64,000 nucleotides of DNA from Gracilinanus agilis (taxonomy: Eukaryota). Position numbers and translations under genes: made by a program. The stretch lies in the NCBI RefSeq assembly GCF_016433145.1, contig NC_058130.1, positions 738,225,051 through 738,289,050 on the forward strand, given 5' to 3'. Position 1 is the first letter of the stretch. Every line of letters begins with the position of its first letter. Positions 1 through 59,800 of the stretch are shown here, one piece after another. The notes below the pieces were generated by a model. The model ran no database searches, was not told the DNA's origin, and saw only the letters and a program-made list of their open reading frames with translations.

Positions 1-1053
<1,053 letters not shown>

Positions 1054-1305
1054 GATGTCCCGTCCTATTCCACGCAAAGGACCACGGCGCCCTCCGGCCC
1101 GAAGGCCCCTGCATTTTGCTTGTTTTCCTTAGCAGGGGAGGCTGGGGAGAGGCGGGAAAGCCCTGATGGCGGTCTAGCTTCTAACACCTTCCGCCTGCGT
1201 CCCTGGCACTGAATGTACGTTGTAGAGTGTCCTTGCTGTATTGTTCACGTGGCCCCTGCAGTCTGTGTGGTGTGTCTGTGTTTTCTAAGAGGCCTTTTAG
1301 TTTGT

Positions 1306-1311
1306 AATAAA
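1306..1311 (+). terminator. Poly(A) signal AATAAA, probable PRR36 3' end
   Basis: Only AATAAA seen shortly after the PRR36 stop (about 250 nt downstream), preceded by a UG/U-rich tract at 1261-1300. Confidence 0.7.
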
Positions 1312-1413
1312 GATGAGCCTGAATGGTAGCTGCGGCGTTCTGAGGGACCCGCCTGTCTGGAACTTCTGTGTCCCAGCTTCTCCCCAGGGGCCCAGGTGTG
1401 CAGCCAAGCCTTT

Positions 1414-1664
1414 TCACTGACGGTGAAGGGGCGGCTGAGCAGGAGAACCGGGCTTTAGGAGCAGGTGTCTTCCTTCCCCCTGGGGGCTCAGGACCCCCAG
1501 GGAGGTGGCAGGAGACTCTGGGAGGCCCGAGGATCCCTGTGAGGGTGGGCGTTTTGGACGCTGGGGCAGGCTCCGGGTGCCCCCATGCTGTCGACAGTGA
1601 GTGAGCAGGTTGGAGCTCTGGCTGAAGGATTTTCCACACACTCCACAGCGATGGGGCTTCTCTC
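1414..1664 (-). CDS. GFI1-like last coding exon (ZF5 equivalent + 56-aa Pro/Ser tail)
   Basis: ctttccacag|GA GAG AAG CCC completes the TGEKP linker; stop TGA ends at 1414. Confidence 0.93.
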
Positions 1665-3107
1665 CTGTGGAAAGGCAGAGAGGAATTTGGAGGAAGTGGG
1701 GGGCTGGGTGAGGACCAGAGGTAGAGATATGGGTCTGGGGAGCAGGGAAACTGAGGTAGGGTGGAGAAACCAGGTGGGAGCCCGGAGAGGCCGAGGTCCC
1801 GAGTCTGGTGGGGCTGGCTGGTGGGGGCAATGAGAACAAGGGAGGGTAATGGATGGGGAGAGGGAGGCCGCCTCGGCCTGGGAGCTTTTCTAACTTCCCC
1901 TCTAAGAGTTGGAGATCTGGGGGGTGGGGGGTGGAGGGGCGGGGCCATCCTTCGGTCACTCCCCTGAGACCTCGCTCCCCAGCCCCCCTCCTCGTCTAGT
2001 CCCCGGCCCGCACCAGTGTGGATGAAGGTGTGCTTCTTCATGTCGGATTTCTGGTGGAAGCGCTTGGCGCAGAAGGGGCAGGGGTGGGGCCGCGTGCCCG
2101 AGTGGATGAGCAGGTGTGTGGACAGAGTCGAGGAGCGCCGGAAACTCTTCCCGCACACGCCACAGGGAAACAGTCTCTCCTGGGGGCAGGAGGGGAGCGG
2201 TGGAAGGCGGGACGAGGCTAAGGTTCCTCCCCTCTCGCCCGCCCCACCCTAGAGGCCCAAGGATGGACAGGGGCTGCGGCTGCACTAGCCTCTGTCCCTC
2301 CGCGCCCGCCCCGGCCCGGCCCAGGCCTCCTGAGTTACCTTGAATCGCTGAGGGGCCTGTGCCGTGGGCGGTGACAACAGTTGTAGCTCTGGACTTGGGG
2401 AAGTGACTCGGGTCTCAGGCCGAGACTGGAGCTGGGGCTGGGGGCAGCGACCATCCCAGGAGAGGCTGACCAGACCCTGGAGCCCTGGGGTTGAGTCAAA
2501 TGAATCCGGTCACTCTGAGCCTCCTAGGACCTAACAGCCAGGCAACCCCTCGAGATCTGGGGGTCTTAGCCCACAATCCTCGGACTTCTGCCTCCCTAGG
2601 CCCAGGGGAGCTCTTACCAAGGAGGCCACCCTCAGAGAAGGCAGGGGAGGAGCTGGCTTCGGGGTCAGGGTCTGGGGATGGGGCCCTCTCAGCCCATTTG
2701 CCTCCAAGGCTCCTCACAGCCAGGGCTGGATCCCCTGTAAAGCCTACACAAGAAGAACCCATCACTTTTTAAGTAGGCCTCAGTCATTCTAGCCCCCTAC
2801 TCTGCTGCAACCCAACCCTCTCCCCTCTCCAGTCCAAGGCATCTTGACTCCTAATTGGTCCCCCCTCACCCTTGCCCATCCTAAACTCTCAAACTCCAGT
2901 CTGGATTTGTCCAGTTATTCTGTCCTTATTCTCTGCTCCTCCACCTTTTTCTCCCTCCAGAACACAGGCATCGGAGTAACCAGCTCTTCCATGGGAGCCC
3001 TGGAGGATTCTGGGGCTCTGGGTCTTCAAAAAGGACAGGCCATACTTACCCATCAACTTTTTTCTTTCGGAGGATCTTCTGCTTCTTACTAGGAAGGATC
3101 GAGGCAT
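1414..3107 (-). CDS. GFI1-family SNAG + three C2H2 zinc-finger repressor (third GFI1 paralog), 245 aa; join complement(3050..3107,2618..2734,2339..2484,2014..2179,1414..1664)
   Basis: N-terminus [11 protein letters not shown] is a SNAG motif. Fingers [42 protein letters not shown] and [21 protein letters not shown] are near-identical to GFI1/GFI1B ZF3-5. Exons of 58+117+146+166+251=738 nt join in frame over four GT-AG introns (phases 1,1,0,1) with no internal stop. Confidence 0.88.
2014..2179 (-). CDS. GFI1-like coding exon 4 (ZF3+ZF4 equivalents)
   Basis: cctgcccccag|GAG AGA ... CAC ACT G|gtgcgg; 166 nt, phase 0/1; same ER...HTG boundaries I recall for the GFI1 penultimate exon. Confidence 0.95.
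2339..2484 (-). CDS. GFI1-like coding exon 3 (linker, ends QRFK)
   Basis: Donor AAG|GTAACT in phase 0, as the next exon requires; the phase-compatible acceptor aaccccag| is weak. Confidence 0.6.
2618..2734 (-). CDS. GFI1-like coding exon 2 (linker)
   Basis: Acceptor ctttacag|, donor TTG|GTAAGA; phase 1/1; open frame DPALAV...EGGLL. No homology support. Confidence 0.65.
3050..3107 (-). CDS. GFI1-like coding exon 1 (SNAG; [20 protein letters not shown])
   Basis: ATG at 3107 with G at -3; donor G|GTAAGT at 3049. Confidence 0.9.
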
Positions 3108-9232: not shown

Positions 9233-9517
9233 TCAGTTACCCAGGCTCTGGCCATAGGAAGGGGCCAGCTCATCGGTTTCACTGTCCGTGCTGCCCTCAC
9301 TGTCCTTGGCTGGACGGTCCAGTCGTCGGAAGAACCGGGCATCTCGCGGGGATAGAGGATATAGGGCATCCTGTAGGGCTGCCCCAACCCCTACACCTAC
9401 GCCCAGGAGCTCCTCATCTGAGGAGGGCAGCGAGTCCTCATCCAGATGACGCACCAAATGGAGGCTGTCGAATGCCAGGGGGTCCTCAAACGGGGGTGGG
9501 CCTTTCAGTAGCCGAAC
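9233..9517 (-). CDS. EVI5L: EVI5L last coding exon (VRLLKGPPP...QSLGN*)
   Basis: 285 nt to TGA. Confidence 0.95.
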   Translation of the reverse strand, partial: VRLLKGPPPFEDPLAFDSLHLVRHLDEDSLPSSDEELLGVGVGVGAALQDALYPLSPRDARFFRRLDRPAKDSEGSTDSETDELAPSYGQSLGN

Positions 9518-12500
9518 CTGGGAGATGGGGAAAGGGGAGGTAAAGGTTAGTAAGGCAGAGCACTGGATGGATCAAAACCCATGTTAGAGGGGAAGATAAG
9601 TTGTGGCCAGGATGAGGTGGGAGATAAAGGGGATGCTAGAGAGGACCGAAGGGGATGGAGATGGAGGAAACAAAGGAAATGACTAAGGGATGAGGAAGGG
9701 AAAGGGAAAAAGAGGGAGGGAGCAAGACCCGCTGGATAGCAGGGGGCACAAAGAGAGGAGAGATGGTTCTCTGGTGGAGAACACAGTGTGGGGTGTTTAG
9801 TACACCATTGAGGCCCACCAGCAAGAGGCTGTTACTGGATTGGAGGGGAAGAAAAGGGGCCAGATTGGGGAGAGGGGGAGGGGGCTCAGGGAGAGGGCTG
9901 GTAAGGTTAGGAAAAGGTCTTCCACCTTACCCCAGCCCTGAGTCACCCAGACACCAGAGCCTGAGGGGGAGGCTCTGGGGGAGGGGGAGTTACCCTGGGC
10001 TCTGATACGGAGGGGTGGCCTGTGGGAGCCTACAAGTCCCAGCATGCAGTGCGTCGCCTCGGTCCAGCTGCCAGCCTGCCCAAGCTGAGAGACTCTGCTC
10101 AGATCAAGACAAGAGTTATGGGGCAGGGAGCTCCTGTCCTGATGTGAGGCTCAGGAGGGGGCCAGAGACACCAGCCATAGGGTGTATGGACCCCAGCCAG
10201 GGAGCCCACACTTTGAAGTCCTGCCTCCTCTTTTCTCTTCCTTTCTCCCTTCCACTCTGACCATGGGGACTTCTCTTCTGCCCTTGTAGGCATCATAAAT
10301 ATGGGGCTCTGGAGGGGGCCAGCTTGTGGAACAGGGTCCGAGAAATAGAACACCTGGGGGGGGTGGAGTCTTTTCCTTGCCTGTCTCCCTCTGCAATTAT
10401 AGGCACAATCCCGTATTTGCTCTGAAGACAACCAGAGCCTCCCAACAGAAAGGAATAGGTGATAATAATGGAAGACAAGTCTTTGGTTTGACATCTTCCA
10501 AGAGCCTTCACCTCCATTATCTCAAGGAGTCCACACAGTAGTAGGGCAGCAGGGATTTTTACTCTATTTTACACATTAGGAAAACTAAGGTTAGGAAAGA
10601 GGAAGGGACTTATTTGCCCATGGTCCCCCACTGAGATAGTGGCAGAGGGAGGACCACAACCCAAATTTCCTGATTTATTAGGCCAGGACTCCTGCCATTC
10701 ATTTTGCCACAGGGCCCATCAACTGTCCAGAGGTTTGGATGAAGGATGCCCTGTTCTCTCTCTGGTCTGCTCAGGAGTAGCTAGAGCACTTGTCAGGAGC
10801 CCTACAACTCATCCCAGGGAAGGTCAGATTGCTCTCTAGAAGACTAGAGGTACTATACTCTTTTTTTTTAAACCCTTACCTTCCAGTTTACAATCATTAC
10901 CATGTATTGGTTCTAAGGCAGAGCAGGAAGGGCTAGGAAACGGGGATTAAGTGACTTGCCTAAGGTCACAAGGCAAGGAAGTATATGAGACCAGATTCAA
11001 ACCCTGACTCTAGGCCTGGCTCTCAATCCTGAGCCACCCACCTGCTGCACTCTACTCCTTTCTTATCACAGTGAATATGGAAGAAACTTCATGGAAATTT
11101 GCCAGGAAGTCCAAGACCCTAGGAATCTCTCCTCTAGTCACATTAGCTTGTTCTCTTGAAATACCAGGGCCCTGGCATAAAGATGGAAGCATGCCAGTAG
11201 AGGGAATGGATGGCTTCTCTTCTTGGAAGACTGGAAGGCAGGTGAGAGAAGCAGTGACTTGAGAAGTCAAACCCCGAGGCAGGCCTGTGACTCACCTCGG
11301 CCTTGAGCTCGTCAATCTGATCCTTGAGCTCACGGATGTACTGGGAGGAGTCTGAGTGGTTCAGCTGCCCCTGGATCATACCTTCTTCTCTCTGTAAGGC
11401 AAAGCGTTCCCATCCTAAGTCACTGCATGGAGAAGAGAAGAAAAAGAAGACGAGGGCTTCCCCACATCAACCTCTTCTCTTTTGTTGAGTCCTCTGACCC
11501 TTGCCTTGGTCCCTCACCTGAATCTCCAGCTCTGCAATTCGCTGCCTCATCTCTGCTACAGCAGCCATGCTGTCTGCCTCCCGGAGCCTTACTGCCATCA
11601 CCTCCTCCTTGCTCTGGAGGGGCAAAAGCAGCAGGAAAGCATAGGCAGCTGACTCAGGGGAGGGAGGGATGGACAGAGGGAGGGGCAGTAGAAAGGGAAT
11701 GGATGGAGGCCCAGCAGACGGGGCTACAGGGTAAGCCCTAGGAAGATGGGGATAGGCCTCAGAGCATGCAGGGAAGCCAGCACAGCTGGGGGCTGGGGGG
11801 CAGAGGCGGGGCCCACCTTACACTCAGCCTCAGCATGCTTGCGTTTGCTCTCACTCAGTTGAGTCTGCAGGCCTTTGTTCTGAGCCACCAGGTAATGGAG
11901 CTTTTCCTGAAGGCCTGCACTCTCTGCTTCTACCCGGTTCAGCAGGTTTCGGTGGATCTGGTCCTAGGAGGAGGGGGAGTCACCAACAAGTGACCAAGTG
12001 GCCCCAGACAATGCAAGGGGGAGCCTAGAGCCAGAAACACGGTCTAACAAAACCAGGTGACCGTTAGCCTGTAACTGCAAGCAAATGAGGGGAGCCGGAG
12101 GCGCAGCCCAGTGGGATTCATGAAGTGCATATAGGGCAAGAGGATGGCCTGGGCTTGGTAGTAGGCTGAAGGTAGGGTGATGACGGGGAACACGGGGACA
12201 TTTCTCATTCTGGGGAGGTTCTCTGACCTGTGTCTCCAGTTCCACCACTCGTTGCCGAAGTTCCCTCCCTTCAGCCAGAGCATGGGCCTCTCGCAACCGG
12301 ACGGTCATCAGTTCATCCTGTAGGTCACTAATGGCCAGTTTCCGGGGAGACTCCTTCCATCTCCCTCCCCGAGAGAGGTGGGCCTATCCATAAGGGAGGA
12401 AGGGTCATTAGGATTTAGAGCCAGAAGAGACCTTAGATGGAAAGATAAGCCTTCTGGAATCTCTATGCAACTCCTAGAGTATGAAATGACTTCTAAACTT

Positions 12501-15500
12501 CTTCCAAATAAGACCCTGTCCTGGGGCTGCAGTACCAGAAAGATGAAAACATAAAGGTGAGAGAGTGGGGGGGTGGCCTCTGCCTGGATTTGTCCTCTGG
12601 GGAGCTTCATGTGGTTGGCCTAACTGGGGCTGTATTTGAGGGTCCTCCCTGTGGAAGCTCCTCACCAATATGAGATGACATTTCTGTGCGCTTTTATGCT
12701 TTACAAAGCATTTACATTATCTCACTGCTTCTCACAACAGCTCTGGGAGGGAGTTAGTGTAAAGCATTTGCACATTTTAAAGAACTATATAAATGTGAGT
12801 TACTTTTATTACTTTAGTCCTCCAGAATATCTGTCATTCGCCACCCCTTGGTAGATAGCTTTATGAACTCAAATCACGATGGGGCCTGACCTGTCCAGGA
12901 GTTTCTTGGACACTGGCTAAGCTGAATTTCACACCATTCTCTGGTACAGGTACAAGTAAGGAGATAAGAGGCCTGGCTAAACTCACTCACTCACTCACTC
13001 TCTCTTTCTCCCCTTTCCTTTCTTCCTCCTTTTCCCCCTTTCTTCCTTTATTTCTTTCTTTCTGTCTTCCCTTACCTTCTGTCTTAGAATTGATACTAAG
13101 TATTGGTTCCAAGGCAGAAGGGTGGTAAGGGCTAGGCAACTGGGGGTAAGTGATTTGCCCAGGGTCACACAGCTATAACTAGATTTGAATAGGCAATAGT
13201 TTCCAGGAAGAAGGGGGAATGGGGGCTAAGGGCCAAGATAAGACAAGCACTTGTCCAGAACGAAGGTGCCCATTGCTTCACTGTCTCTTGCCCTGGTCAG
13301 ACCCCATCTGGAGGACTGTGGTCAGCCCCAGAAACCATATTTTAGGAAAAATGTTGAAAAAGTTGAAATGCATCCAGAAAAGGGTGCCTGGAAAGCTGAC
13401 TAGATTAGAAACCATGCTATACTTGGTTCAGCTAAAAGAACTGGGATTCTTACTTGGAGAAGAGAAGACATGTGGGAGACATTAGTGATCTTCAGTGATT
13501 TAAGATGTCATCAGAAAAGAGGGATTAGACTTATTTTTTTTTAAACCCTTAACTTCTGTGTATTGGCTCCTAGGTGGAAGACTGGTAAAGGTGGGCAATG
13601 GGGGTCAAGTGACTTGCCCAGGGTCACACAGCTGGGAAGTGTCTGAGGCTGGATTTGAACCTAGGACCTCCTGTCTCTAGGCCTGGCTCTCAATCCACTG
13701 AGCTACCCAGCTGCCCCTAGACTTATTTGACCCCAGAGGGCAACAATGGAAGGAAACTGCAAAGGAGTACTTTTAGGCTTGACATAAGGAAAAACTGTCC
13801 AACAATTAAAGTTGCCTAAAGTGGAAAGGGCTGCTTGTCATGTTCCTTAATTTTCTTTTTAACATAGCAAATTGCTCTCAAGAAAATGACATCTTGTAAT
13901 GGGGAATGGGTTCCCCTTCTCAGGAAGCCTTGGGTTGTAGACTTAATTACATGGAAAAGCAGCAGTGTACAGGGGATTCCTGTTCATACAAGGATTGACA
14001 AAATGGCCACTGAGATTGTGAGATTCAACAGACATGGAGTCTGCAGCCAGATTCCCCCCTCCAACCTTCTCTCTAGCTTGGCAGGAACTGCTAGAGCTTG
14101 CTCAGCCGGCACAGCCTTCTGGAGGCTGGGGACAGCTCTACCCTCTTGAGGAGTGCTAGAAGAAGACTCTCTCTAATGGAGTGAACACTGTTAGCCTCGT
14201 GTTAGCCTCAGGAAAACCCAGGCTCAAGAGAGAAAATGGTGTTGCCCACATGACAAGGAAGTGGCAGGGATATCACCTGAACTCGGGTTTCTTGACTGCC
14301 AGTCCAGGACAGTGCAATGCACCAAAGAAAGAGGGAAATCCTTCCAGGGAGGCCTGGGGCTCTTGCTGCTCTCACCTGCCAGCTGTCTGTGAGTTCCTGC
14401 ACCTGCAGTTTCAGCTCTCGAAGAGAGGCCACGGCCTCACTTTCCCGAAGTTTGAGACCTTTAAGTTCCTCCTGTAGTCGGGCCACATTGTTCTCATCAG
14501 GAAGTGAGTTGTTCCTCTAGGAAGGGCAGCAGGTGGAATAGTCAGTCAGTTCCAGGTGGAACAGTCCTACACTACCCCAACCAATGAAACTCTCCCCAGC
14601 TCCCTAGCTAGGTTCCACAAGCAACCATTCAGGAAGTGGCAACCACTGTTATTTAGGGAACACTTTAAAGTTATATGGTGCAGGGGTGACCATGTTGTCT
14701 CTAATCCATCCACTCTAGTGGGTCTCTACATTGCCTCCAGGATCAAATAGAAAATCCTCTTTGGCTTTATAAGCCCTTTAAAACTTCATCCCTTCCTACC
14801 TTTCCAGCCCTCTTATACCCGACTCCCTCCATGAACTCTACAATCATGTGACATGCTTCATTTTTGTTTTTCAAACAAGACACTGTCTCTTTCTTTTGCC
14901 TAGTGATTTCCCTGAAGTTTCAGCTAAAATCCCACCTTATACAAGAAACCTTCCCAATCCCCCTTAATACCAGTACCTTCCCTCTTTGGATTCTTTCCAA
15001 TCTATCCTTTCTCTATCTTGTTTGTACAAAAGGTGTTTGCACATTGTTTCCCTCTTTAGATTGAGTTTTCTTGCAGGGTGGATTTGTTTTTTGCCTTTGT
15101 ACCCCCAGTTCTTAGGAGGTGCTAAATAAATGCCAGTGATTTGATATTACAAAGTGCTTTCCCTCCAATAACCCAGTGAGGCAGGTAGTACAAGTAAGGA
15201 CATCACAGTTTGTCTTCCTTCCTTCCTTCCTTAAACCCGTATCTTACATCTTAGAAACAATACTGTGTATTGATTCTAAGGCAGAAGAGTGGTAAGAGTT
15301 GGCAATGGGGGTTAAGTGACTTGTCCTGGGTCTAGCCCACAACCAGGAAGTGTCTGAGGCCAGATTTAAATCTAGGACCTCTGTCTCTGTCTGCTCTCAA
15401 TCCACCGAGTCACCTAGCTGCCCCTGACAATTTTTCAGTGGGGGAAATAGAGGTTCAGAGAAGTTCTGATATGTCTAAGGTTGCAAAACAAGCAAGTGTT

Positions 15501-47800: not shown

Positions 47801-50800
47801 TTAGTATGGGTTGTATTAGATGGCTACTGAAGTCCCTTCCATCTTTGCAATTCTGTGATTCTAATATCTTAGACCTATTCTATCTTGTCAGCCTTTAAAT
47901 TGTGGCATCCAAAACTAAACACAATAGTCTCAATGTAGATGATAGTCTCCTTTGTTTCAGTCACTGCACTTCTATTAATGTAGTTTCAGATTGCATTAGC
48001 TATTTCTGACTTATACTACACTACTGGATTATATGGGGCTTGCAGTCAACTAAAAACACCCAAGTGTTTCTCATATGAACTGACATTTGGAAATCTCCCA
48101 TCTTGTACTTAAACAGACGATTAAAAAAATCTAAGTATAAGACTTAATACTTATCCTTAATAAATTGTATCATATTAAGATCTGGCTCAACGTGTTGTGG
48201 TCAGGCAAGTCCTTTCTGGATCCTCATTCTATTATCCTAGATACTAGGTTTTCTGTTCCATTTTCACATCATCTACAAATCTGGTAAGCATGCTATCTAT
48301 GCTTTCAACTAAGTTGCTGATAAAAATATAGAACAGAACCAGGAACAGAGGAGAGCCTCAAAAAGCATACCACTAGAGACACCTCCCTCCAAGATGATAC
48401 TGAATGAATATTCTTCAGCTATATTGGACCAGTCAATGATCTTTGACCTGTCCTTCTTGACTTCTCTACATCTTCATACACTGTTGACCATCCTCTCCTC
48501 TTAGATGGGTTTTTAGGTTGCTACTCTTCTTCTAGTTCTCTGACTTGCCTCACTACTCCTTTTCAGTCTCTTTTTGCTAGTTCTAAATCCACGTAATACC
48601 TCTTAATAGTGGGTGTATCCCAATGCTTTGTCCTAGGACCTCTCCTTTCTTTTTGTACTCCCTTGACAAACTTTTTAGCTCTAAAAGGTTTAGTTATCAA
48701 TTCCATGCAGATAACTCTCAGATCTATGTATTCAGTCCCAGGCTCTTTCTTGATCCTGTTTCATATCACAGACTACCTATTGGACATTTCAAACTGAATA
48801 TCATGGAGATACATCTCTTCCTTAAAAAAAATTTTTTTTTTGTTCTGAACTTAACAAACCCCAAACAAAACTGGTATTTCCATAAATGTAGAACAGATAA
48901 AGGAATGTCCAGGAGACTTCAGATCTCCATGATATATGATTTATTTTTCTTTTTAAGTATGTAGTAATTCCTGTAGCTTTCAAAGCTGCTCTGCCTGTCT
49001 GTGTATCCTTATGGTCTTTTTGTTCTCTGAATTAAAAAACAAAACAAGCAAAACAAAAAACCCCTAGCCTCAGTAGGTTTCTTTTCTTTTTTCCTTCCCT
49101 ATCCCTATTTTCCTTTATCCTCCCACACTCATCTCACACTGATAAAGAAAAGTCATTGTAAAAAATATGCATACTCAGCAAAACAAATTCCTATGTTGGC
49201 TGTGTATCAAAATATTTGTCTTATTCTGTATCTTGAATCCATCATCTCTTTTGTCAAGAGATGGGTGGCATAATTCATCATCAGTTCTCTAGAATCATAG
49301 TTCACAGATATTTCAGACTCAATATGACCAAAACAGAATTTATTGTCTTTCCCACAAACCTTCCCTTCTACTGGACTTCCACCATTTTTTCCAGTCCTTA
49401 AGGTTAAAAACCTTGGCTTATCTTACATTCAACACTTTTTCTTATTTCCTATATCCAATCAGCAGCCAAATCCTGCCATTTCTGCTTCTATGTTTTGAAT
49501 TCACCTCCTTCTCTCTACTCACAATTGCCACCTTAATTCAGGGCTTCATTACTATTCACCTAAACTGCTGTAATGGCCTCCTCACTAGTGTTCCTGCCTC
49601 TCATCTCCCCATTCTAATATACCCTCCATTCAGCTGACAAAATGATTTTCCTTAAGTACACATCTGACCATATTACATTTCTTCTTAAATTCTAGTGGCT
49701 CCCTAATACCTACAAGATTAAAAAGAAGTTCTTCAGGGTTTTAAACCCTTTCACAAGTTGGCCCTAACTTATCATTCCAGGATCATCAAATATGCCTTCA
49801 TTCCTACTCCTATGGTCCAGTCAAATTGATCTTCTTTCTTCTGTCAATCCTGGCATTCCATTTCCTGTCTCTGTCTTCATGCCTTTGCACTGCATGTCTA
49901 TCCTTCTGAAATGGAATATGATTCTATCTTCCCTATACCTCATAAAACTGAAATAATCCCTGATTCCCTCAACTGCTAGTGACTTCCTACCCTAACTACT
50001 GTGTATTTATTTTGTATTTATCTTCTATTATATATGTGCATATTATCTCGTGAAATAGAATATAAATTTGTTGGAAAGAAGAATAATTTCCTTTTTTGGT
50101 CTCTGAATCCTTAGTGTAGTGATGGCAAACCTATGGCCCTCTCTATGGGCACATGGCTGCTCTCTCCCCACCCCTACCCCCAGAGTTCCTTTCTAGAAAG
50201 GTAGAGGGACTCAGGTGTAGCCGCTCCCTTCCCCCTCTCTCCATGGTGTCTGATGGCATTTTTTCCGCATCATCCACCCAGCAGCCCAGTGGGAGCACAT
50301 AGGGTGTAAGATGGGTGGTTCACAGGCAGCAGAGCTGGAGGGGAGAGAAGTACTTGGGTCACTCCCCTCCCCCCCTCTACATTCATTGAGGGCATTCCTT
50401 ACTTCACCAACCCCTTTGCCCAGCAGTCCAATGGGGGCACTTCCTTCCTCCCCTGTGTGGAGTAAGGGGGAAGCTGGGAGTGCCTGGCACTTGGTGGGGG
50501 GAGGGGTAGATGGTCTGGGGGAGGGTGGGCATGGCACTCCATCTCTAAAAGGTTTGCTACCACTGCCCAAGTGCCTAGCACAGTGCCTGGCACACAGCAA
50601 ATATTTAATAAATGTTTGTTGGTTCATTTGTTACTCTAACAACACTGGTACAATCCATTTCATCCTTTGCTAACCCAAAAAGTTACTATTTCTCTTCCTA
50701 AATTCTCATAAAACTGACACTAAATAACATTACAGAATTTGTCTGGGATTGATATTATGCTGACCTGTTTATAGTTTGTAGAATTCTTTCCCCTTTAAAA

Positions 50801-53800
50801 AAACCCAAGACAACATTTTCCCTGTCTCTAACCATTTAGTCTCTTCCATTTTCCCTAAGTTCAATTCTTCAGAGATCACAATAAATAATTATTTAAGTTA
50901 TTTAAGAGAACAAAAAACAAAAAACACCCAGAATAAATCCTCCAGAGGCTTGACCTTGATGATAGAATCATAGACTCTCAGAATTGGAGGGTACCTCAGT
51001 AGTGGACCTCAGGACATTCCACTTTTAGACAAATCTAATTGTTAAGAAATACTTCCTCATGTTGAGACTCAACCTGCTCCTTCCCAATGCTTCAAGTTCT
51101 ATCTTCGGAGACCTAGGAGAACAAGACTTTTCCACATGACCCAGCTCCTTAAATAATTAAGGACCATAATCATGTCCCCTTCCTCTGCCCCTTTACCTGA
51201 CATCTTTTGTTTTCCAGACTAACTTCCCAACAGCCTGGTTTCCAATCCCCTCCCCTTATCATCATCCTACCCATGTGACTTAGGTGCTTTCTCACTAGCT
51301 CCTTATCCATCTTTTTCTTCAGTTCCCTTCTGATTGTGCTAATCTAACTCTTTTCAATCAGATAATCATTCCCTATAATGGAGGATGGAAAACAATCCAG
51401 AATTTTAAAAAATGCTGAGTAGCTCTACTTTTTCCTTGTCATCCATTAGCATTACACCACCCTTCTTTACCTACCCCCACTCTGAAGAAAGCTTTTTTTT
51501 TTTTTTTAAAAGCCCTTTGTCATGTCTCACCTCAGCCTCTCTACCTCATTCTGCCATTCTTCAGTGTCCTTTTGTTCCCTGCCCTTTATTCCATCTTTTC
51601 CAGTGGCATGGTCTCTAGTCTCTTTCCCCTTTCCCTTCAATTGGTACCTGCCACCATTTCTTCTCCAGGTTAACCATCCCCTCTCAAGCTGTTACATGGA
51701 CATTTCTCTTTGCATTTGGAAAGCTATATTAGATTCTTTCCCCCATGAGTCTCTTTAAATGCCCCCCTTTCTTCCTTATATGAAATATTAATAATCATAT
51801 TATCAGAATTTCATCCTTAAGAGCGTTCTATCCATTCTACAACTGGCTTCCTTTTTAAGAGTCTCTTGTCTTGGGAACATTGTTTTTTTTTATTTCTGAC
51901 CTTTTTAAATCTGCCCTCCCAACACTGTGGATGTCTGACTATGTTTGGCATTCCCCTATTTGCTCTAAACTTTAAAATAACATGACCCCCTTTTCTTCCA
52001 TGTTCTAATGCTTCCACTTCCTAAGCAGTTTCTCCCTGGCGGTCAAAATCAGATTCAGAGTAGTAGTTTCCCTTGCCTACAGAGAAAAGAACTATTAACA
52101 AGACAAATTAATCAGATGCTCTGGTTTTTAGCGTAATGAATTTCCTATAGAATCACAGTTAGAAAAGATTCAGAGGCCATCTAATCCAACTCCTACCTGA
52201 ATAAGAATCTTCTAACAATTTGCTGGACAAGTACCTAGCCTTTGCTTTAAACCCTCCAGTAAGAGGAAAAGTCACTCCATTACAGACAGTTTTACTTGTT
52301 AGGAAGTTTTTCCTTGCATTCAATCTAAGGGTCTCTCTGCAACTTCTCCCCATTGCTTTTAGATCCTTCCCTTTTGGAACTAAGCAGAACAAGCCTAATT
52401 CATCTCCATTCCTTAAATATCAAGATTGCTACCATGTCATCCCTAGCCTAAACATCCCCAGCTCTCTCTCAGTTGACCCTTATATTGTGTGATGAAGTCC
52501 TTTATCATCCTAATTGCTTCCTTTGATTCCTCTTCAGCTTCTTCATACGTGGTACCCAGAAATGAACACACCACTTTATATATAGTCTATTCAAGGCAAA
52601 GATTAGTGAAACTATATGACCTTCCACCCTTTGACTTTTTTAATAAAGCCTTAGATAGCATTTGAATTTTTTTTGGTTGCCATATCATTCTTGACTCATA
52701 CTGACTTTGTAGTTCACTAAAAATTCCACACTTTTTTCAGATAATCTCCTTTCTTGTCTTTTACATATGAAGCTGATTTTTTTTAACCCGTATGTAAGAC
52801 TTTATACCCTGGTTTAATGATCTAGCTTGTCAAGGTCTATTTGGATCCTAACTGCAATTTAATATGCCAACTATCCTTCATAGCACTGTGTTTTCTGGAA
52901 ATTTTATAAGCATGCTAACTATGGTTTTATCCAAGCTTTTGATTAGAATGTTATAATAGTACTGGCTAAGCACAAATCTCTATATCTTCTTCAGTAAAGA
53001 CAGAGGTCATCATGTTGACATTAAACTACTGAAAACTACTTTTTGGGTCTGGCCACCAGTTTACCCACATCTTTTCACCTTCATGAGAAAAACATGACAA
53101 ATATTTTGCTAAAATTGAGGAAAACTCAAGGAGATTAAAGACAAAGAAAACAGTCATAGTAGCACCTTTCGTGATAGCAAAAACATGGAAACAAATTGTG
53201 TACTCAGCAACTAGGAAATGAATGAACTGTGGTATATGAAGATAGTGAGATACTACTGTGCTATAAGAAATTATGAATATGAGCAATTCAAAGAAATAAA
53301 TAATACTTGTATGAAACTGATGTGTGAAGTAAATAGACCAAGAGATCAATATACACCATGATACAATGATATGAATGAAAACAACATTAAAAGGCAACCA
53401 GACATTGACTAATTTTCATAACTGATATTGGTCCCAGAGAAAAGATGATGAAACACTTCTTTCTAGGATGAAGAATATTATATATGCCCACATACAATAC
53501 ATGGCAACAACTTCTGTTTATTTGTTCTCCTTTGTTTTGAGGAAGGGTTCAGTGAGAGTTGGTCATATCAGTGTGTATATACATATGTACACATAATGTA
53601 TATTTACAAACATGTGTACCTACGTGCATATACATGTATGTGTAAATATACATTTTATCATATATATGTATAGTTATCCTGTGGATGGAACTTATTTGGA
53701 CATAACCTATCTCCAGAAAGCTAAACTCTCTGTGCCTCAATTTTCTCAACTGCAAAATGAAGGGACTGAACTAGATGCTCACCAAGGTCCTTCCCATCTT

Positions 53801-56800: not shown

Positions 56801-59800
56801 AATACCACTTGTGACCCTTAAGATCTTCATTTTACTACTCAGGGCTTCCCAGTCTTTACAGATGTTTTGTGGCAGTATAAGCTATTCTTATACAAATCAT
56901 CATGGGGTTTAGCTGATGAATTTGATGAACTTCACAGGATTCTTAGGTCCTGGATACATATTCCAAAATGATAACATACCTCTTAAATGGCTATGTCAGG
57001 GGTACATAGTCACTTTTCATACCACTGAGCAAGTAGTTACTCATCATACCATATCTCTTCCTTCTGTGTTCAGTGAATTCTTTTCTCACACATCCTGGCA
57101 CCCATCCATCTTCTTTATTATCCCAAAGGAACATAAGACACTGCTTTTGCCTCAAGAACTCTAGATTCATGAGCTACCATAAGAACCTTACATGTGGCTT
57201 CAACAGTTCCATTTCCCCCCATTCTTTCGCAGTGGTATATTCTTCCATTTACCAACCTCTTGGTTTAAATCTCTAATCCTGTTTGGAATCCTAGAATGAT
57301 AAGGCTAGATGAAATAAAAATCATCTAGTCCAATCCCCTCTTTTTTTTTTCAGATGAGGAAACAGATCCAGACCTAATAATAATAGCTAACATTTACAAA
57401 GTTTTTTAACGTTTGTCAAGTGCTTTTGAATTTAGAAAAAATATTTATCCATATAACAACCTTTGGAAATAGGTGCTATTATTACCCTAATTTTACAGAT
57501 GAGGAAACTGAGGCAAATAGAAATTAAGTGACTTGCCCAGAGGTACACAGGCTAGTAAGTGTCTAAGGCAGGATTTGGACTTAGCACTTCCTAATTCCAG
57601 GCCCAGTGCTCTATCATAGTTGACTTGATTTATTATCCTTCTTCTAAAACTCACCTCTTTTCTGAAATTCTTCATTTGTATCTAAGACACCAAGTTAAGT
57701 TGGCAAGTCAGACATCCTTCAAGTCATCCAGGTTTGTACCCTCACCATTATCCATGCGACAGTGGCAACTGCCTGGTTAGCCACCTAAATACTCTCTTCT
57801 AGAATTACTTTACCTTGTTATTACTGAATAAGCTAGAAGACAAACTCTTTTCATCTGCCTTTAAATTTTCCTTCACAGCTTGTTCCAGTTTGCCTTTTTT
57901 GGACTTACACACATTATTCCTCTACACACAGGTGAAATTCTGTCTCATTGGCTATTTCTAGAACACAAGATTCCATTTCCCTTCTCTAGGCCTTTACAGA
58001 GGCTGCCCTTATACTGGAGCTACTCTCATTCTCAACTATGCCTCAGCTCACACATCATCTCTTCCTCAAGGGTCTTTCTGATCTCCCTAATTTGGGATCT
58101 CTCTCCTCCTAACTGATCTTACATTGTATGTACTTATCTGTGTATGTATCATATTACCCAAGTAGAATGTTAGCTCCTTATGAATGCTTATTTTTGATTT
58201 CATATCCCAAGTGCCTCGGCCACCCTGTCCAACCTTCTCATTTTACTGATGAGAAAACTGAGGTAGAGATAATGACTTGCTCTGGGTCACCCAGCAAGTT
58301 AAGTCTCTGAGGTAGGGCTCAAACTTTGGTTTTCTGATTCCAGTTTTAGCATATGACCCAGTACATTGTCATCACCTCTTCTGTTATTCCTTAAGTATAT
58401 TCTAGACCAAGGAGTCTTAAGGGGTCCATGAATATTTTATAACTGTGTTCTTATATAATTGGTTTCCTTCATTATTTTATCATTTAAAAACATTGTTCTG
58501 AAGATAAATAATTTAAAGCCCTTCCTAACCTTTCCTCTTCCTGTTTTTCTAGGATTCTTATACCCTACTCCCTCCCACATGTTCTGGGATCTAGTGACAC
58601 TGGCCTCCTTCATTTGTCTTGAACAAGGCATTCCATCCTCTGACTCTACAGTTTCACCAGCTATTTCTCATACTTAGATCTCTTTCCTTCCTCATTTCTG
58701 TTTACTGGCTTCTCACAAGTTTCAGCTAAAGCCTCATCTTCTACAAGAAACCTTTTCCAGTCTTCCTTAATCTTAGTGCCTTCTCTCTGAGATTATCTCT
58801 AATTTATTCTACATATAGTTGTTTGTCTGTTGTCTCACACATTAGATTATGAGCTCTTTGAAAGCATGGCCTGTTTTTGCCTTTCTTTGTACCCTGAGCA
58901 TTTAGTCCAGTGCCTGGCACATAGTGCCCAATAATTGTTATTGACTTGACTTGAGAAAGAATCCACAGGCCTCACTAGACACCAAAAGGGTCCATTACAC
59001 AACATAAGTTATGATTCCTTGTATTAAACCAATGTAAATGTTAACAAGCATAAGACCTAACTTGAACATTCAAAACCACTTGATTCTTCCTGACTGTTCT
59101 CTTTAATGCTGGGCTCTTATTACCCTACCAAAGCCTGTAGCAAAACTGGTCCCATCACTCTCCCAAGAACACATCATATACATTTCCAATTCTGGACCTT
59201 CATTTATAGTGTTTGACTTGCACCTAGAATGTCCTTCTTCACTTTTCTTCTTATCTTAGGTCTGTACAATCTTTTGGGTCCAAATGTAGTTCTTTTTTTT
59301 CCTCCATAAAGACTTTCCTAACCCCTCAGCCAAAAACAATCTCTTCCTCTGCACTCCATGACTGCATACTGCTTACTTGGCACTTACTAAAAGCTATTTT
59401 CTTTCTTTTCTTTGTCCTGTGATCTCATCAGTGTTGGGAACTCAGTGAAGAAACCCTTACCTATGAAGTCTGGTACCTACTTATAGTCTTTAGACAATTA
59501 TGGGAGCAATAAGAAGTTCAATGACTTGCCCAGGGTCACACAGCTAATAGGAATCAAAGGAGTCAGAACTTGAATCCAGATCAATTCTATCTCTGAGGCC
59601 AACTCTTCATCTACTATGTTTCATGGCCTCTTGTAGGCTTATTAGTATAGCAGCCTTCTAATAAGAGTCCTTGCTTCACTTCTCCCTACTCTGATTCATC
59701 CTCTGCGTATTGCCAAAGAGATTTTTCCTAAAGCATAGGTCATCCTTCATGTCACTACCCCATGCATTGCTACAATAGTTCCTCATTATCTTTGATTTGG

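What the first reader, a model, noticed from the sequence alone, without database searches (positions are those of the whole stretch)
1414..3107. Intact third GFI1-family gene hidden between PRR36 and EVI5L
Seen: five minus-strand exons splice through GT-AG introns into a stop-free 245-aa ORF with a SNAG N-terminus and three C2H2 fingers; the ORF track shows only fragments. Known: mammals are described as having two members, GFI1 (next to EVI5) and GFI1B (next to TSC1/GTF3C5), both LSD1-CoREST-recruiting repressors in blood, hair-cell and gut secretory lineages. Inference: this is neither gene but a further paralog kept in this marsupial. An automated LOC model may exist, but I know of no functional description.
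Basis: partly seen in the sequence, partly recalled or inferred. Interest (0 to 1): 0.95.

Follow-up and report, generated by a model that had tools for sequence, protein, structure and literature searches.

The report
Undescribed third GFI1-family repressor gene
This opossum carries an intact, selectively maintained third relative of the blood and hair-cell regulators GFI1 and GFI1B; the gene is old (also in other marsupials, platypus, alligators, turtles and probably sharks), was not found in placental mammals, and exists publicly only as misnamed automated models.

Summary
Five minus-strand exons with GT-AG introns splice into a stop-free 245-codon ORF with an MPRSFLVR (SNAG) start and three C2H2 fingers. 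Two refinements: the orthologous exon 2 acceptor is 9 nt upstream (2743, giving 248 aa), and the last ~18 residues follow a one-base C-run difference from the Tasmanian devil.

The gene is neither GFI1 nor GFI1B. Orthologues occur in eight marsupial species, platypus, two alligators and several turtles, and probably three sharks. In the window, devil, platypus and alligator it sits downstream of an EVI5-family gene on the same strand, mirroring EVI5→GFI1. It shares GFI-family intron positions, and its members form one clade (100/97).

Window versus devil, the fingers give dN/dS ≈ 0.10; linker and tail are near neutral. All 12 canonical base-contacting residues match GFI1 fingers 3–5.

Best reading: a minimal SNAG-plus-three-finger repressor that binds AATC-core sites and recruits LSD1–CoREST (inferred).

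No paper was found; public models carry at least eight unrelated names. New member of a known kind; interest moderate.

The parts
3050..3107 (-). Exon 1 (58 nt, ends in phase 1). The ATG is at 3107-3105. It encodes the SNAG N-terminus [19 protein letters not shown], followed by the donor GTAAGT.
   Evidence: splice check; a stop lies 6 codons upstream in frame, and there is a G at -3. MPRSFLVR is invariant in 12 third-gene proteins and 3 shark proteins. The exon is 91% identical to the devil's. Equivalent exons with phase-1 consensus donors are present in platypus, alligator and turtle.
2618..2743 (-). It encodes a weakly conserved linker.
   Evidence: alignment with the devil's intron 1/exon 2 boundary. 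(other marsupials read ...IGFTPGD...). It is 80% identical to the devil, and the linker gives omega 0.72.
2339..2484 (-). Exon 3 (146 nt): a proline-rich linker. By position and size it is probably the fingerless relic of the 138-144-nt exon that encodes fingers 1-2 in GFI1B, the shark gene and turtles.
   Evidence: exon size series 138/144/144/143/146, always directly before the 166-nt exon. The homology is inferred from position only.
2014..2179 (-). Exon 4 (166 nt; phase 0 in, phase 1 out). It encodes fingers 1 and 2, equivalent to GFI1 fingers 3 and 4 (recognition helices RSSTLSTH and QKSDMKKH).
   Evidence: an exon of the same 166 nt with the same boundaries (ER.F.C ... HTG|EKPH) occurs in alligator GFI1B, the shark, turtle, alligator, devil and the window. 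It is 91.6% identical to the devil. Pfam zf-C2H2 E = 4e-11.
1414..1664 (-). Exon 5 (251 nt). It encodes finger 3, equivalent to GFI1 finger 5 (helix QSSNLLTH), then a poorly conserved tail, with the stop TGA at 1416-1414.
   Evidence: The tail gives omega 0.85. No finger 6 is present in mammals, whereas alligators and turtles keep it.
1482..1486 (-). A run of five C with one base more than the devil's. It shifts the frame past the TAA that ends the devil protein and creates the lineage- or assembly-specific C-terminal ~18 residues.
   Evidence: nucleotide alignment of exon 5, window against devil L005.
1065..1141 (-). Alternative terminal exon used by the NCBI model XP_044541315.1. It is joined from a donor at 1422|1421, which removes the stop at 1414, and it is antisense to the end of PRR36.
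   Evidence: Whether this splice is real could not be tested.
25..1053 (+). Last coding exon of the convergent neighbour (PRR36-type: proline-rich, with a BTBD8_C tail). Its AATAAA is at 1306-1311 (+).
   Evidence: (PF15363, E = 4e-20). The equivalent neighbours are a 1304-aa product in devil, an 866-aa product in platypus, and a product with BTBD8_C in the glider.
9236..14516 (-). 3' coding exons of the upstream neighbour on the same strand, an EVI5-family RabGAP gene (EVI5L by position). The last coding exon lies at about 9236-9547, roughly 6 kb upstream of exon 1.
   Evidence: tblastn of the EVI5-family exons that flank the alligator and platypus orthologues gave up to 100% identity, E down to 4e-48.

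Best explanation
This is a functional third member of the vertebrate GFI family, an ancient paralog of GFI1 and GFI1B that most likely dates from the early vertebrate genome duplications. It sits directly downstream of the EVI5-family gene that neighbours PRR36. It is retained in marsupials, monotremes, crocodilians, turtles and probably sharks, and was not found in placental mammals.

In mammals it has been pared down to the two parts that define GFI action. One is an N-terminal SNAG peptide (MPRSFLVR...). The other is three fingers equivalent to GFI1 fingers 3-5, the DNA-binding fingers. A fast-evolving linker joins them.

Inferred mechanism: the fingers bind the same AATC-core motif as GFI1 and GFI1B. 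The SNAG end inserts into LSD1 (KDM1A) as a histone H3 tail mimic and brings in the CoREST-HDAC complex, so the protein represses its targets. It would do this without the partner-binding fingers 1, 2 and 6, and without the Lys8 that is methylated in GFI1 and GFI1B.

Shown here: gene structure, orthology, synteny and purifying selection on the fingers. Inferred: DNA specificity, LSD1 recruitment, repression, tissue of action and the timing of the duplication.
For: Structure: five GT-AG exons and an intact ORF. The same layout is seen in the devil. Intact models exist in eight marsupial species, platypus, two alligators and at least eight turtle species.

Family: fingers 1-2 are 80-84% identical to GFI1 and GFI1B. 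The three fingers are 63/79 identical to GFI1 fingers 3-5, and 12 of 12 canonical contact residues (-1, +2, +3, +6) are identical. The best single-stretch PDB match is 2KMK, GFI1 fingers 3-5, at 143.5 bits. The 166-nt two-finger exon has identical boundaries and phases in GFI1B and all third-gene members, and the intron inside finger 1 is shared by GFI1B, shark, turtle and alligator.

Separate gene: one clade at 96/98 and 100/97. Grouping the mammalian members with mammalian GFI1B is rejected (p-AU 0.003). GFI1B and the third gene lie on different scaffolds or chromosomes in alligator and platypus.

Synteny: an EVI5-family gene followed by this gene on one strand in the window, devil, platypus and alligator. 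The same order holds for EVI5-family→gfi1ab in Takifugu. The convergent neighbour has a BTBD8_C tail in the window and the glider. The turtle's neighbour is a TGFBR3-family gene.

Selection, window versus devil: exons 1 and 4 are 91-92% identical against 63-76% for the introns. Fingers give dN/dS 0.10; SNAG plus fingers give 0.17 (bootstrap 0.07-0.42). MPRSFLVR is invariant from shark to opossum. Unannotated SNAG exons with consensus phase-1 donors were found in platypus and Chinese alligator and are spliced in frame in other models.

Deep age: three shark proteins join the clade at 91/83 and share the derived one-residue deletion in the last finger (H-x3-H, against H-x4-H in all GFI1, GFI1B, cyclostome and mollusc sequences). 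The epaulette shark has three GFI-type genes on three contigs.

Mechanistic background (review PMC7649360): GFI1 and GFI1B are described there as 'the two members' of the family. Fingers 3-5 form the AATC-binding domain, fingers 1, 2 and 6 mediate protein contacts, and the 20-aa SNAG domain recruits LSD1 as an H3-tail mimic. A short GFI1B isoform lacking fingers 1-2 is functional.
Against: No transcript evidence was obtained.

The linker and tail evolve almost neutrally (omega 0.72-0.85). The clade has long branches compared with the nearly frozen GFI1 and GFI1B fingers, so constraint is weaker than in the paralogs.

Residue 8 is Arg, not the Lys whose methylation is reported to be needed for LSD1 recruitment by GFI1 and GFI1B (papers listed in PMC7649360). 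From my own knowledge, Snail1 also has Arg8 and binds LSD1.

dN/dS rests on one species pair, with only 13 synonymous and 5 non-synonymous changes in the fingers.

The deep tree is unresolved: placing the shark gene with GFI1 or with GFI1B is not rejected (p-AU 0.27 and 0.29). No EVI5 exons were found within 10 kb of the shark or turtle genes.

The neighbour's identity as EVI5L rather than EVI5 rests on position beside the PRR36-type gene and on my recollection of the human map. Absence from placentals, birds, squamates, amphibians and teleosts is only a lack of hits among annotated proteins.

No Monodelphis model was returned, and no polyadenylation signal lies on the minus strand before the window's edge.
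Confidence: 0.75

Rival explanations
1. It is a real, conserved gene, but it does not act as an LSD1-recruiting repressor. With Arg8 in place of the methylatable Lys8, and without fingers 1, 2 and 6 or the intermediate domain, it could occupy AATC sites as a competitor or modulator of GFI1 and GFI1B, or it could use other cofactors.
For: Arg8 is present in all third-gene and shark proteins, against Lys8 in every vertebrate GFI1 and GFI1B. The partner-binding fingers have been lost. All contact residues are retained, so it would share sites with GFI1 and GFI1B.
Against: The first eight residues are invariant over very long times. That is hard to explain unless the N-terminus still binds something in the way a SNAG domain does. 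From my own knowledge, Snail1 carries MPRSFLVR and binds LSD1. A short GFI1B isoform lacking fingers 1-2 still works through LSD1-CoREST (paper listed in PMC7649360).
Confidence: 0.15
2. It is a decaying relic, an ORF that is still open but no longer functional or transcribed in this species. Its apparent conservation would reflect slow decay or selection acting only in other lineages.
For: The linker and tail are near neutral. A one-base C-run change altered the C-terminus in this species. The NCBI model for this species lacks the SNAG exon. No RNA evidence was obtained. Fingers have been lost progressively: six in sharks, four in reptiles, three in mammals.
Against: Finger dN/dS is 0.10 and exons are clearly more conserved than introns between lineages that, from my own knowledge, split about 70-80 Myr ago. 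All splice sites are intact. ORFs are intact in eight marsupial species. All 12 contact residues are retained.
Confidence: 0.07
3. It is a recent, lineage-specific duplicate (or a mis-assembled copy) of GFI1 or GFI1B that has diverged quickly.
For: The fingers are 77-80% identical to both paralogs. The tree cannot formally exclude an origin from the GFI1 side, because GFI1 fingers 3-6 are identical from bilby to frog, which made test 1 uninformative.
Against: Orthologues occupy the same syntenic slot in devil, platypus and alligator. The clade includes turtles and alligators at 100/97. A GFI1B origin within mammals is rejected (p-AU 0.003). Introns are present, so it is not a retrocopy.
Confidence: 0.02
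4. It is an ordinary member of the large poly-zinc-finger gene families, as its database names suggest (ZNF358-like, ZNF836-like, ZNF628-like, ZNF672-like, ZNF316-like, ZNF48-like).
For: Only the automated names support this. Generic C2H2 proteins outscore GFI proteins in profile searches, because their many fingers add up.
Against: It has a SNAG start, GFI-specific recognition helices, GFI-family intron positions and clade membership. The names disagree with each other from species to species.
Confidence: 0.01

Closest known systems
GFI1 (growth factor independent 1), the SNAG/six-finger repressor located downstream of EVI5
   Same: It has a SNAG N-terminus and sits directly downstream of an EVI5-family gene on the same strand. 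Its three fingers are 80% identical to GFI1 fingers 3-5, with all 12 canonical contact residues identical. The 166-nt two-finger exon and the intron phases are the same, judged against GFI1B, since a GFI1 exon map could not be recovered.
   Different: It is a separate locus and a separate clade. The mammalian form has three fingers instead of six, lacking fingers 1, 2 and 6. Residue 8 is Arg instead of Lys. The linker is short and unrelated, the protein is 245-248 aa against about 390-420, and it evolves much faster. In the members that keep the last finger, its spacing is H-x3-H rather than H-x4-H.
GFI1B, including its natural short isoform that lacks fingers 1-2
   Same: Domain logic and intron positions are the same. 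The short GFI1B isoform shows that a GFI protein without fingers 1-2 can be functional and still work through LSD1-CoREST (PMC7649360).
   Different: It is not an isoform but a separate gene on another chromosome or scaffold. Grouping it with mammalian GFI1B is rejected. It lacks finger 6 as well, and it has Arg8.
Snail1 (SNAI1), a SNAG-domain zinc-finger repressor
   Same: From my own knowledge, the first eight residues (MPRSFLVR, including Arg8) are identical, and Snail1's SNAG domain is the one for which LSD1 binding as an H3 mimic was worked out (Lin et al. 2010, cited in PMC7649360).
   Different: The fingers are unrelated beyond the general C2H2 type: SNAI1 scores 56 bits against 143.5 for GFI1 in the PDB search. 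It is not a member of the Snail/Scratch family.
Invertebrate GFI orthologues (Drosophila Senseless, C. elegans PAG-3, mollusc Gfi-like proteins)
   Same: The core fingers have the same recognition helices. The limpet protein also begins MPRSFLVR.
   Different: They are single-copy outgroups with the full finger set and an H-x4-H last finger. The vertebrate genes form a clade apart from them (100/100).

Membership tests
GFI family (GFI1 / GFI1B / Senseless / PAG-3) | N-terminal SNAG domain beginning MPRSFLV | tested here: met
   [11 protein letters not shown] is encoded at 3107-3075. MPRSFLVR is invariant in 12 third-gene and 3 shark proteins. Residue 8 is Arg rather than the Lys of GFI1 and GFI1B.
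GFI family (GFI1 / GFI1B / Senseless / PAG-3) | [quoted passage not shown] | tested here: not met
   Marsupials and platypus have three fingers. Alligators and turtles have four plus a degenerate finger 1. The shark proteins have six. The reduced number is a derived loss within the clade.
GFI family (GFI1 / GFI1B / Senseless / PAG-3) | DNA-binding fingers 3-5 with recognition helices RSSTLSTH / QKSDMKKH / QSSNLITH | tested here: met
   The window has [16 protein letters not shown] and QSSNLLTH. Twelve of 12 residues at positions -1, +2, +3 and +6 are identical. The best single-stretch PDB hit is 2KMK.
GFI family (GFI1 / GFI1B / Senseless / PAG-3) | Family-typical gene structure (intron positions and phases) | tested here: met
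   The 166-nt exon (phase 0 in, phase 1 out at HTG|EKPH) and a phase-1 first exon are shared with alligator GFI1B and with all third-gene and shark genes.
GFI family (GFI1 / GFI1B / Senseless / PAG-3) | Falls inside the vertebrate GFI radiation in a tree rooted on invertebrate members | tested here: met
   The vertebrate clade has 100/100 support against molluscs, and the third-gene clade within it has 100/97.
GFI family (GFI1 / GFI1B / Senseless / PAG-3) | Binds the AATC-core motif and represses through LSD1-CoREST-HDAC | not testable with these tools
   This is inferred from the conserved contact residues and SNAG end, together with the review PMC7649360.
Orthologue of GFI1 | Groups with GFI1 of the same taxa and has the near-invariant GFI1 fingers and the Lys8 SNAG | tested here: not met
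   GFI1 fingers 3-6 are identical from bilby to frog, while this gene differs at 16 of 79 positions. It has Arg8. It forms a separate clade with reptile members. A bilby GFI1 exists alongside third-gene copies in other marsupials, but GFI1 of the same species was not retrieved.
Orthologue of GFI1B | Groups with GFI1B of the same taxa | tested here: not met
   p-AU is 0.003 against that grouping. Platypus, alligator and Trachemys each have both genes.
2R ohnolog on the EVI5L / PRR36 paralogon | Conserved position beside paralogs of GFI1's neighbours | tested here: inconclusive
   An EVI5-family gene lies upstream in four species, and a neighbour with a BTBD8_C tail lies downstream. A TGFBR3-family neighbour is present in the turtle, and EVI5-family→gfi1ab is seen in Takifugu. 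The human paralogon map (1p22, 19p13.2, 9q34) is from my own knowledge. The name EVI5L was not confirmed by a tool, and the shark synteny was not informative.
Processed pseudogene / retrocopy | Intronless copy lacking the parental gene structure | tested here: not met
   There are four introns at family-typical positions.
KRAB or other poly-zinc-finger families (as the database names imply) | KRAB/SCAN/BTB effector domain and a long tandem finger array | tested here: not met
   Pfam found only C2H2 hits, there are three fingers, and the protein has a SNAG start.

The most novel reading that the evidence does not exclude
Non-placental jawed vertebrates run a three-gene GFI network. The third gene, reduced in mammals to a bare SNAG hook plus the three DNA-reading fingers, would share AATC sites with GFI1 and GFI1B but escape their partner interactions (fingers 1, 2 and 6, and Lys8 methylation). 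It would act as a distinct, perhaps tissue-specific, repressor or tuner whose loss in the placental ancestor rewired GFI-dependent blood, hair-cell or secretory-lineage programmes.
Probability: 0.3. Interest if true: 0.7.

Novelty: new member of a known kind. Interest (0 to 1): 0.55.

Why it matters
GFI1 and GFI1B are treated as a two-member family; the review PMC7649360 says so in those words. They are central to haematopoiesis, inner-ear hair cells and gut secretory cells, and they are drug-relevant through LSD1.

A third, selectively maintained member in marsupials, monotremes and reptiles has several consequences:
- The two-gene picture would be a placental simplification.
- It gives a natural 'minimal GFI' (SNAG plus fingers 3-5 only) for separating DNA-bound LSD1 recruitment from the partner functions of fingers 1, 2 and 6.
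- It gives a natural Lys8-to-Arg SNAG variant bearing on the reported need for Lys8 methylation.
- It adds a marker to the 1p22 / 9q34 / 19p13.2 paralogy.
- It shows that current annotation scatters one orthologous gene under at least eight unrelated names and often omits its defining first exon.

Against that, ancient paralogs lost in placentals are common, and nothing here shows an unusual mechanism.

Tried and rejected
(1) Exhaustive profile search with the orthologue alignment. The top 150 were giant poly-finger proteins, because scores add up over fingers, so it was useless for finding orthologues.

(2) The first word-based search over fingers 1-2. It was flooded by six-finger GFI1 and GFI1B proteins for the same reason. 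Orthologues appeared only when I queried the gene-specific exon 5 within a shorter length band.

Run searches showed one run of the window's own species holding 97-100% of the words, kind unknown and probably DNA. RNA runs of other organisms held only 5-7% of the locus, or 31-39% of exon 4. Because several organisms share those words, I read them as a conserved GFI-family stretch and not as expression of this gene.

(4) Atlas search to name the neighbour as EVI5L. Only chance-level hits came back.

(5) PDB search with the 24-residue SNAG end. Nothing was found, because short peptide chains are not indexed.

(6) Loci for wombat and dunnart were not on record. Bilby GFI1, glider and brushtail possum returned no DNA. 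As a result dN/dS rests on one pair, and same-species GFI1 could not be compared.

(7) AU test of 'mammalian third gene plus mammalian GFI1' (test 1). It was uninformative, because those GFI1 rows are identical to non-mammalian GFI1 rows and were left free.

(8) My exact splice mapper failed for platypus P0126 and Takifugu P0088. I used tblastn pieces instead.

(9) Rfam scan of the window: no RNA family.

(10) Considered and rejected: retrocopy (it has introns); alternative 3' exons of the EVI5-family gene (it has its own ATG, a stop lies 6 codons upstream in frame, and the SNAG peptide must be N-terminal); and the idea that the mammalian tail is a recognisable decayed finger 6 (only a faint RP.LP resemblance, too weak to claim).
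Full report
**1. The observation**

I spliced the five proposed minus-strand exons (3107-3050, 2734-2618, 2484-2339, 2179-2014, 1664-1414) directly from the window. Every intron begins GT and ends AG with a pyrimidine-rich acceptor. The exons total 738 nt in one frame and give 245 residues plus a stop. The product starts [11 protein letters not shown] and contains three C2H2 fingers, which Pfam confirms. The window has no N runs.

The flanks are as described. The ORF at 25-1053 (+) is proline-rich and ends in the BTBD8_C domain (E = 4e-20), which is the tail shared by BTBD8 and PRR36. EVI5-family coding exons lie on the minus strand at 9236-14516. The order is therefore EVI5-family gene, then this gene on the same strand, then the PRR36-type gene converging from the other strand.

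**2. It is a real, annotated but misnamed gene with orthologues**

A search with fingers 1-2 returned GFI1 and GFI1B of all vertebrates at 80-84% identity and nothing closer. Six-finger proteins crowded out any orthologue, because scores add up over fingers.

A search with exon 5 (finger 3 plus tail) found a 100% match, XP_044541315.1 'zinc finger protein 358-like' of Gracilinanus agilis. This identifies the window's species. It also found models in wombat, Tasmanian devil, sugar glider, dunnart, brushtail possum, platypus and Chinese alligator. Cluster look-ups added koala, Antechinus, American alligator, five more turtle species, whale shark and epaulette shark.

The names are inconsistent: Gfi-1b-like; ZNF358-, 836-, 628-, 672-, 316- and 48-like; and 'uncharacterized LOC'.

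The model for the window's own species starts at an internal ATG (2762), so it lacks the SNAG exon. It also splices out the stop, from 1422 to 1141, into an exon antisense to the PRR36-type gene.

**3. Refinements to the model**

The devil's annotated exon 2 acceptor aligns with the AG at window 2745-2744. Using it adds Phe-Thr-Gly and reproduces the G-F-T-(P)-G seen in all other marsupials. The protein is then 248 aa.

Near the 3' end, a run of five C (1486-1482) has one more base than the devil's. The frame therefore passes the TAA that ends the devil, wombat and dunnart proteins and runs on to 1414. The tail is poorly conserved in any case.

No AATAAA or ATTAAA lies on the minus strand between the stop and the window's start, while the PRR36-type gene's AATAAA is at 1306 (+). 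The two 3' ends must overlap.

**4. Family membership**

The three fingers are 63/79 identical to GFI1 fingers 3-5 and 61/79 to GFI1B. All 12 residues at the canonical contact positions (-1, +2, +3, +6) are identical. The best single-stretch match among solved structures is 2KMK, the GFI1 finger 3-5 domain, at 143.5 bits.

Exon maps recovered by exact spliced mapping show the following:

- The 166-nt exon opens in phase 0 at 'ER.F.C' and closes in phase 1 at 'HTG|EKPH'. It has identical boundaries in alligator GFI1B, the shark gene, turtle, alligator, devil and the window.
- The first exon ends in phase 1 in all of them.
- The intron that splits finger 1 after 'C..C.K' is shared by GFI1B, shark, turtle and alligator.
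- The exon before the 166-nt exon is 138 nt (GFI1B), 144 nt (shark, turtle) and 143/146 nt (devil, window). The marsupial exon 3 is probably its fingerless relic; this is inferred from position only.

So the gene arose by genomic duplication within the GFI family. It is not a retrocopy and not a generic zinc-finger gene.

**5. Not GFI1, not GFI1B, and old**

In a tree of the finger 3-6 region rooted on molluscs, the third-gene sequences form one clade at 96/98. With more members and all six fingers where present, support is 100/97.

Forcing the mammalian members together with mammalian GFI1B is rejected (p-AU 0.003). The matching GFI1 test was uninformative, because GFI1 is identical over this region from bilby to frog.

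Platypus, alligator and Trachemys each have a canonical GFI1B as well as this gene, on different scaffolds or chromosomes. A marsupial (bilby) has a canonical GFI1.

Synteny is conserved. An EVI5-family gene lies upstream on the same strand in devil, platypus, alligator and the window. A large Pfam-less or BTBD8_C-tailed gene converges downstream in devil, platypus, glider and the window. In Trachemys the downstream neighbour is a TGFBR3-family gene. The same tandem order, EVI5-family gene then GFI1-type gene, is seen in Takifugu.

From my own knowledge of the human map, 1p22 carries LRRC8B/C/D, TGFBR3, BTBD8, GFI1 and EVI5; 19p13.2 carries EVI5L, PRR36, LRRC8E and TGFBR3L; and 9q34 carries LRRC8A, ENG and GFI1B. 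The slot occupied here is thus exactly where a third ohnolog would be expected. That step is inference.

**6. Sharks**

Three shark proteins (zebra, whale and epaulette shark) start [11 protein letters not shown], keep six fingers and form a clade at 98/87 that joins the third-gene clade at 91/83.

They share with turtles and alligators a one-residue deletion in the last finger. The spacing is H-x3-H in 9 of 9 of these sequences, against H-x4-H in every GFI1, GFI1B, cyclostome and mollusc sequence examined. They also share Arg8, although a limpet outgroup has Arg8 too, so the direction of that change is ambiguous.

The epaulette shark has three GFI-type genes on contigs of 67.3, 116.5 and 33.3 Mb.

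AU tests do not exclude other placements for the shark gene (p = 0.27 and 0.29), and no EVI5 exons lie within 10 kb of it. Shark orthology is therefore probable but not shown.

**7. Selection**

Between the window and the devil, identity by region is as follows:

| Region | Identity |
|---|---|
| Exon 1 (SNAG) | 91.4% |
| Exon 4 (fingers 1-2) | 91.6% |
| Exons 2, 3, 5 | 80-84% |
| Introns | 63-76% |

Nei-Gojobori estimates are as follows:

| Region | omega |
|---|---|
| Fingers | 0.10 (13 synonymous, 5 non-synonymous changes) |
| SNAG plus fingers | 0.17 (bootstrap 0.07-0.42) |
| Linker | 0.72 |
| Tail | 0.85 |
| Whole CDS | 0.53 (bootstrap 0.37-0.80) |

I also found SNAG exons that the platypus and Chinese alligator NCBI models had missed (L002 nt 9632 and L001 nt 9755). 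Each ends in a consensus phase-1 donor, and other models of the same or sister species splice them in frame. The two functional modules are under purifying selection, and the rest is nearly free. The clade's branches are long compared with the almost frozen GFI1 and GFI1B fingers.

**8. How it most likely works**

According to the review PMC7649360:

- GFI1 and GFI1B are 'the two members' of the family.
- Fingers 3-5 form the domain that reads the AATC core.
- Fingers 1, 2 and 6 mediate protein contacts.
- The 20-residue SNAG domain recruits LSD1 by mimicking the histone H3 tail.
- A short GFI1B isoform without fingers 1-2 is functional.

The marsupial protein keeps exactly the SNAG hook and the three DNA-reading fingers. 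I therefore infer a minimal GFI-type repressor that binds AATC sites and brings in LSD1-CoREST-HDAC.

It lacks the partner-binding fingers and the intermediate domain, and it has Arg where GFI1 and GFI1B have the methylated Lys8. From my own knowledge, Snail1 has the same MPRSFLVR and binds LSD1. Whether it acts redundantly, competitively or in its own tissue is unknown.

**9. What was not obtained**

- **Expression:** not shown. The multiple isoforms in wombat, koala and dunnart hint at transcript support, because to my knowledge NCBI's pipeline builds isoforms from RNA alignments. That is indirect.
- **Absence from other groups:** absence from placentals, birds, squamates, amphibians and teleosts is only a lack of hits among annotated proteins.
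- **The neighbour's name:** no tool confirmed EVI5L.

**10. Novelty and verdict**

Six literature searches found no description of a third vertebrate GFI gene. The sequences are public, but only as inconsistent automated models.

This is a new member of a known kind. It is interesting to GFI/LSD1 and genome-duplication specialists and useful as a natural minimal GFI, but it is not mechanistically strange. Interest 0.55.

Noticed in passing
window 1482-1486 (minus-strand C run); devil L005 about 11720: The window has one more C than the devil in a C-run. This shifts the reading frame past the TAA that terminates the devil, wombat and dunnart proteins and adds a lineage- or assembly-specific tail. 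It could be a real change or a homopolymer error.
   Followed up: partly
window 1065-1141 and 1421-1422 (minus strand); 2730-2762: The NCBI model for this species (XP_044541315.1) starts at an internal ATG (2762) and so lacks the SNAG exon. It also uses a donor 5 nt before the stop to reach an exon antisense to the end of the PRR36-type gene.
   Followed up: partly
window 1-1413 (minus strand) and 1306-1311 (plus strand): No AATAAA or ATTAAA lies on the minus strand downstream of the stop within the window, while the convergent PRR36-type gene has AATAAA at 1306. The two genes' 3' ends must overlap.
   Followed up: no
L002 nt 9632 (platypus); L001 nt 9755 (Chinese alligator): SNAG-encoding first exons ([11 protein letters not shown] and [11 protein letters not shown]) with consensus phase-1 donors are missing from the NCBI models of these species, so those models lack the family's defining N-terminus.
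   Followed up: yes
P0284, P0285, P0324 (turtles) compared with P0128, P0360 (alligators), the mammalian proteins and P0294 (lamprey): The finger equivalent to GFI1 finger 5 is GFI1-like in turtles (HKCQVCGKAF...NLITH), whereas alligators and mammals share HRCGVCG...NLLTH. A long-branched lamprey protein also has HRCGVCG and RPFPC. This could be parallel change, reversal or gene conversion; it is unexplained.
   Followed up: no
P0354, P0355 (wombat isoforms): The wombat models include an exon 2-skipping form and a form with a 23-residue insertion just before finger 1, which suggests alternative splicing of the linker.
   Followed up: no
L004 19885-29159 (Trachemys, minus strand): The turtle gene's downstream neighbour is an 827-aa TGFBR3-family protein (TGFBR3_N plus a zona pellucida domain). 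It is possibly a full-length counterpart of the short mammalian TGFBR3L.
   Followed up: no
window 48001-52000 and 58001-60000: These stretches have a strongly negative GC skew (-0.24 to -0.32) and low G+C, inside what is presumably EVI5-family intron sequence. They are probably repeats.
   Followed up: no
one search hit list: No Monodelphis domestica model of this gene was returned, although it is the best-annotated relative of the window's species. The gene may be unannotated, outside the length band searched, or lost there.
   Followed up: no
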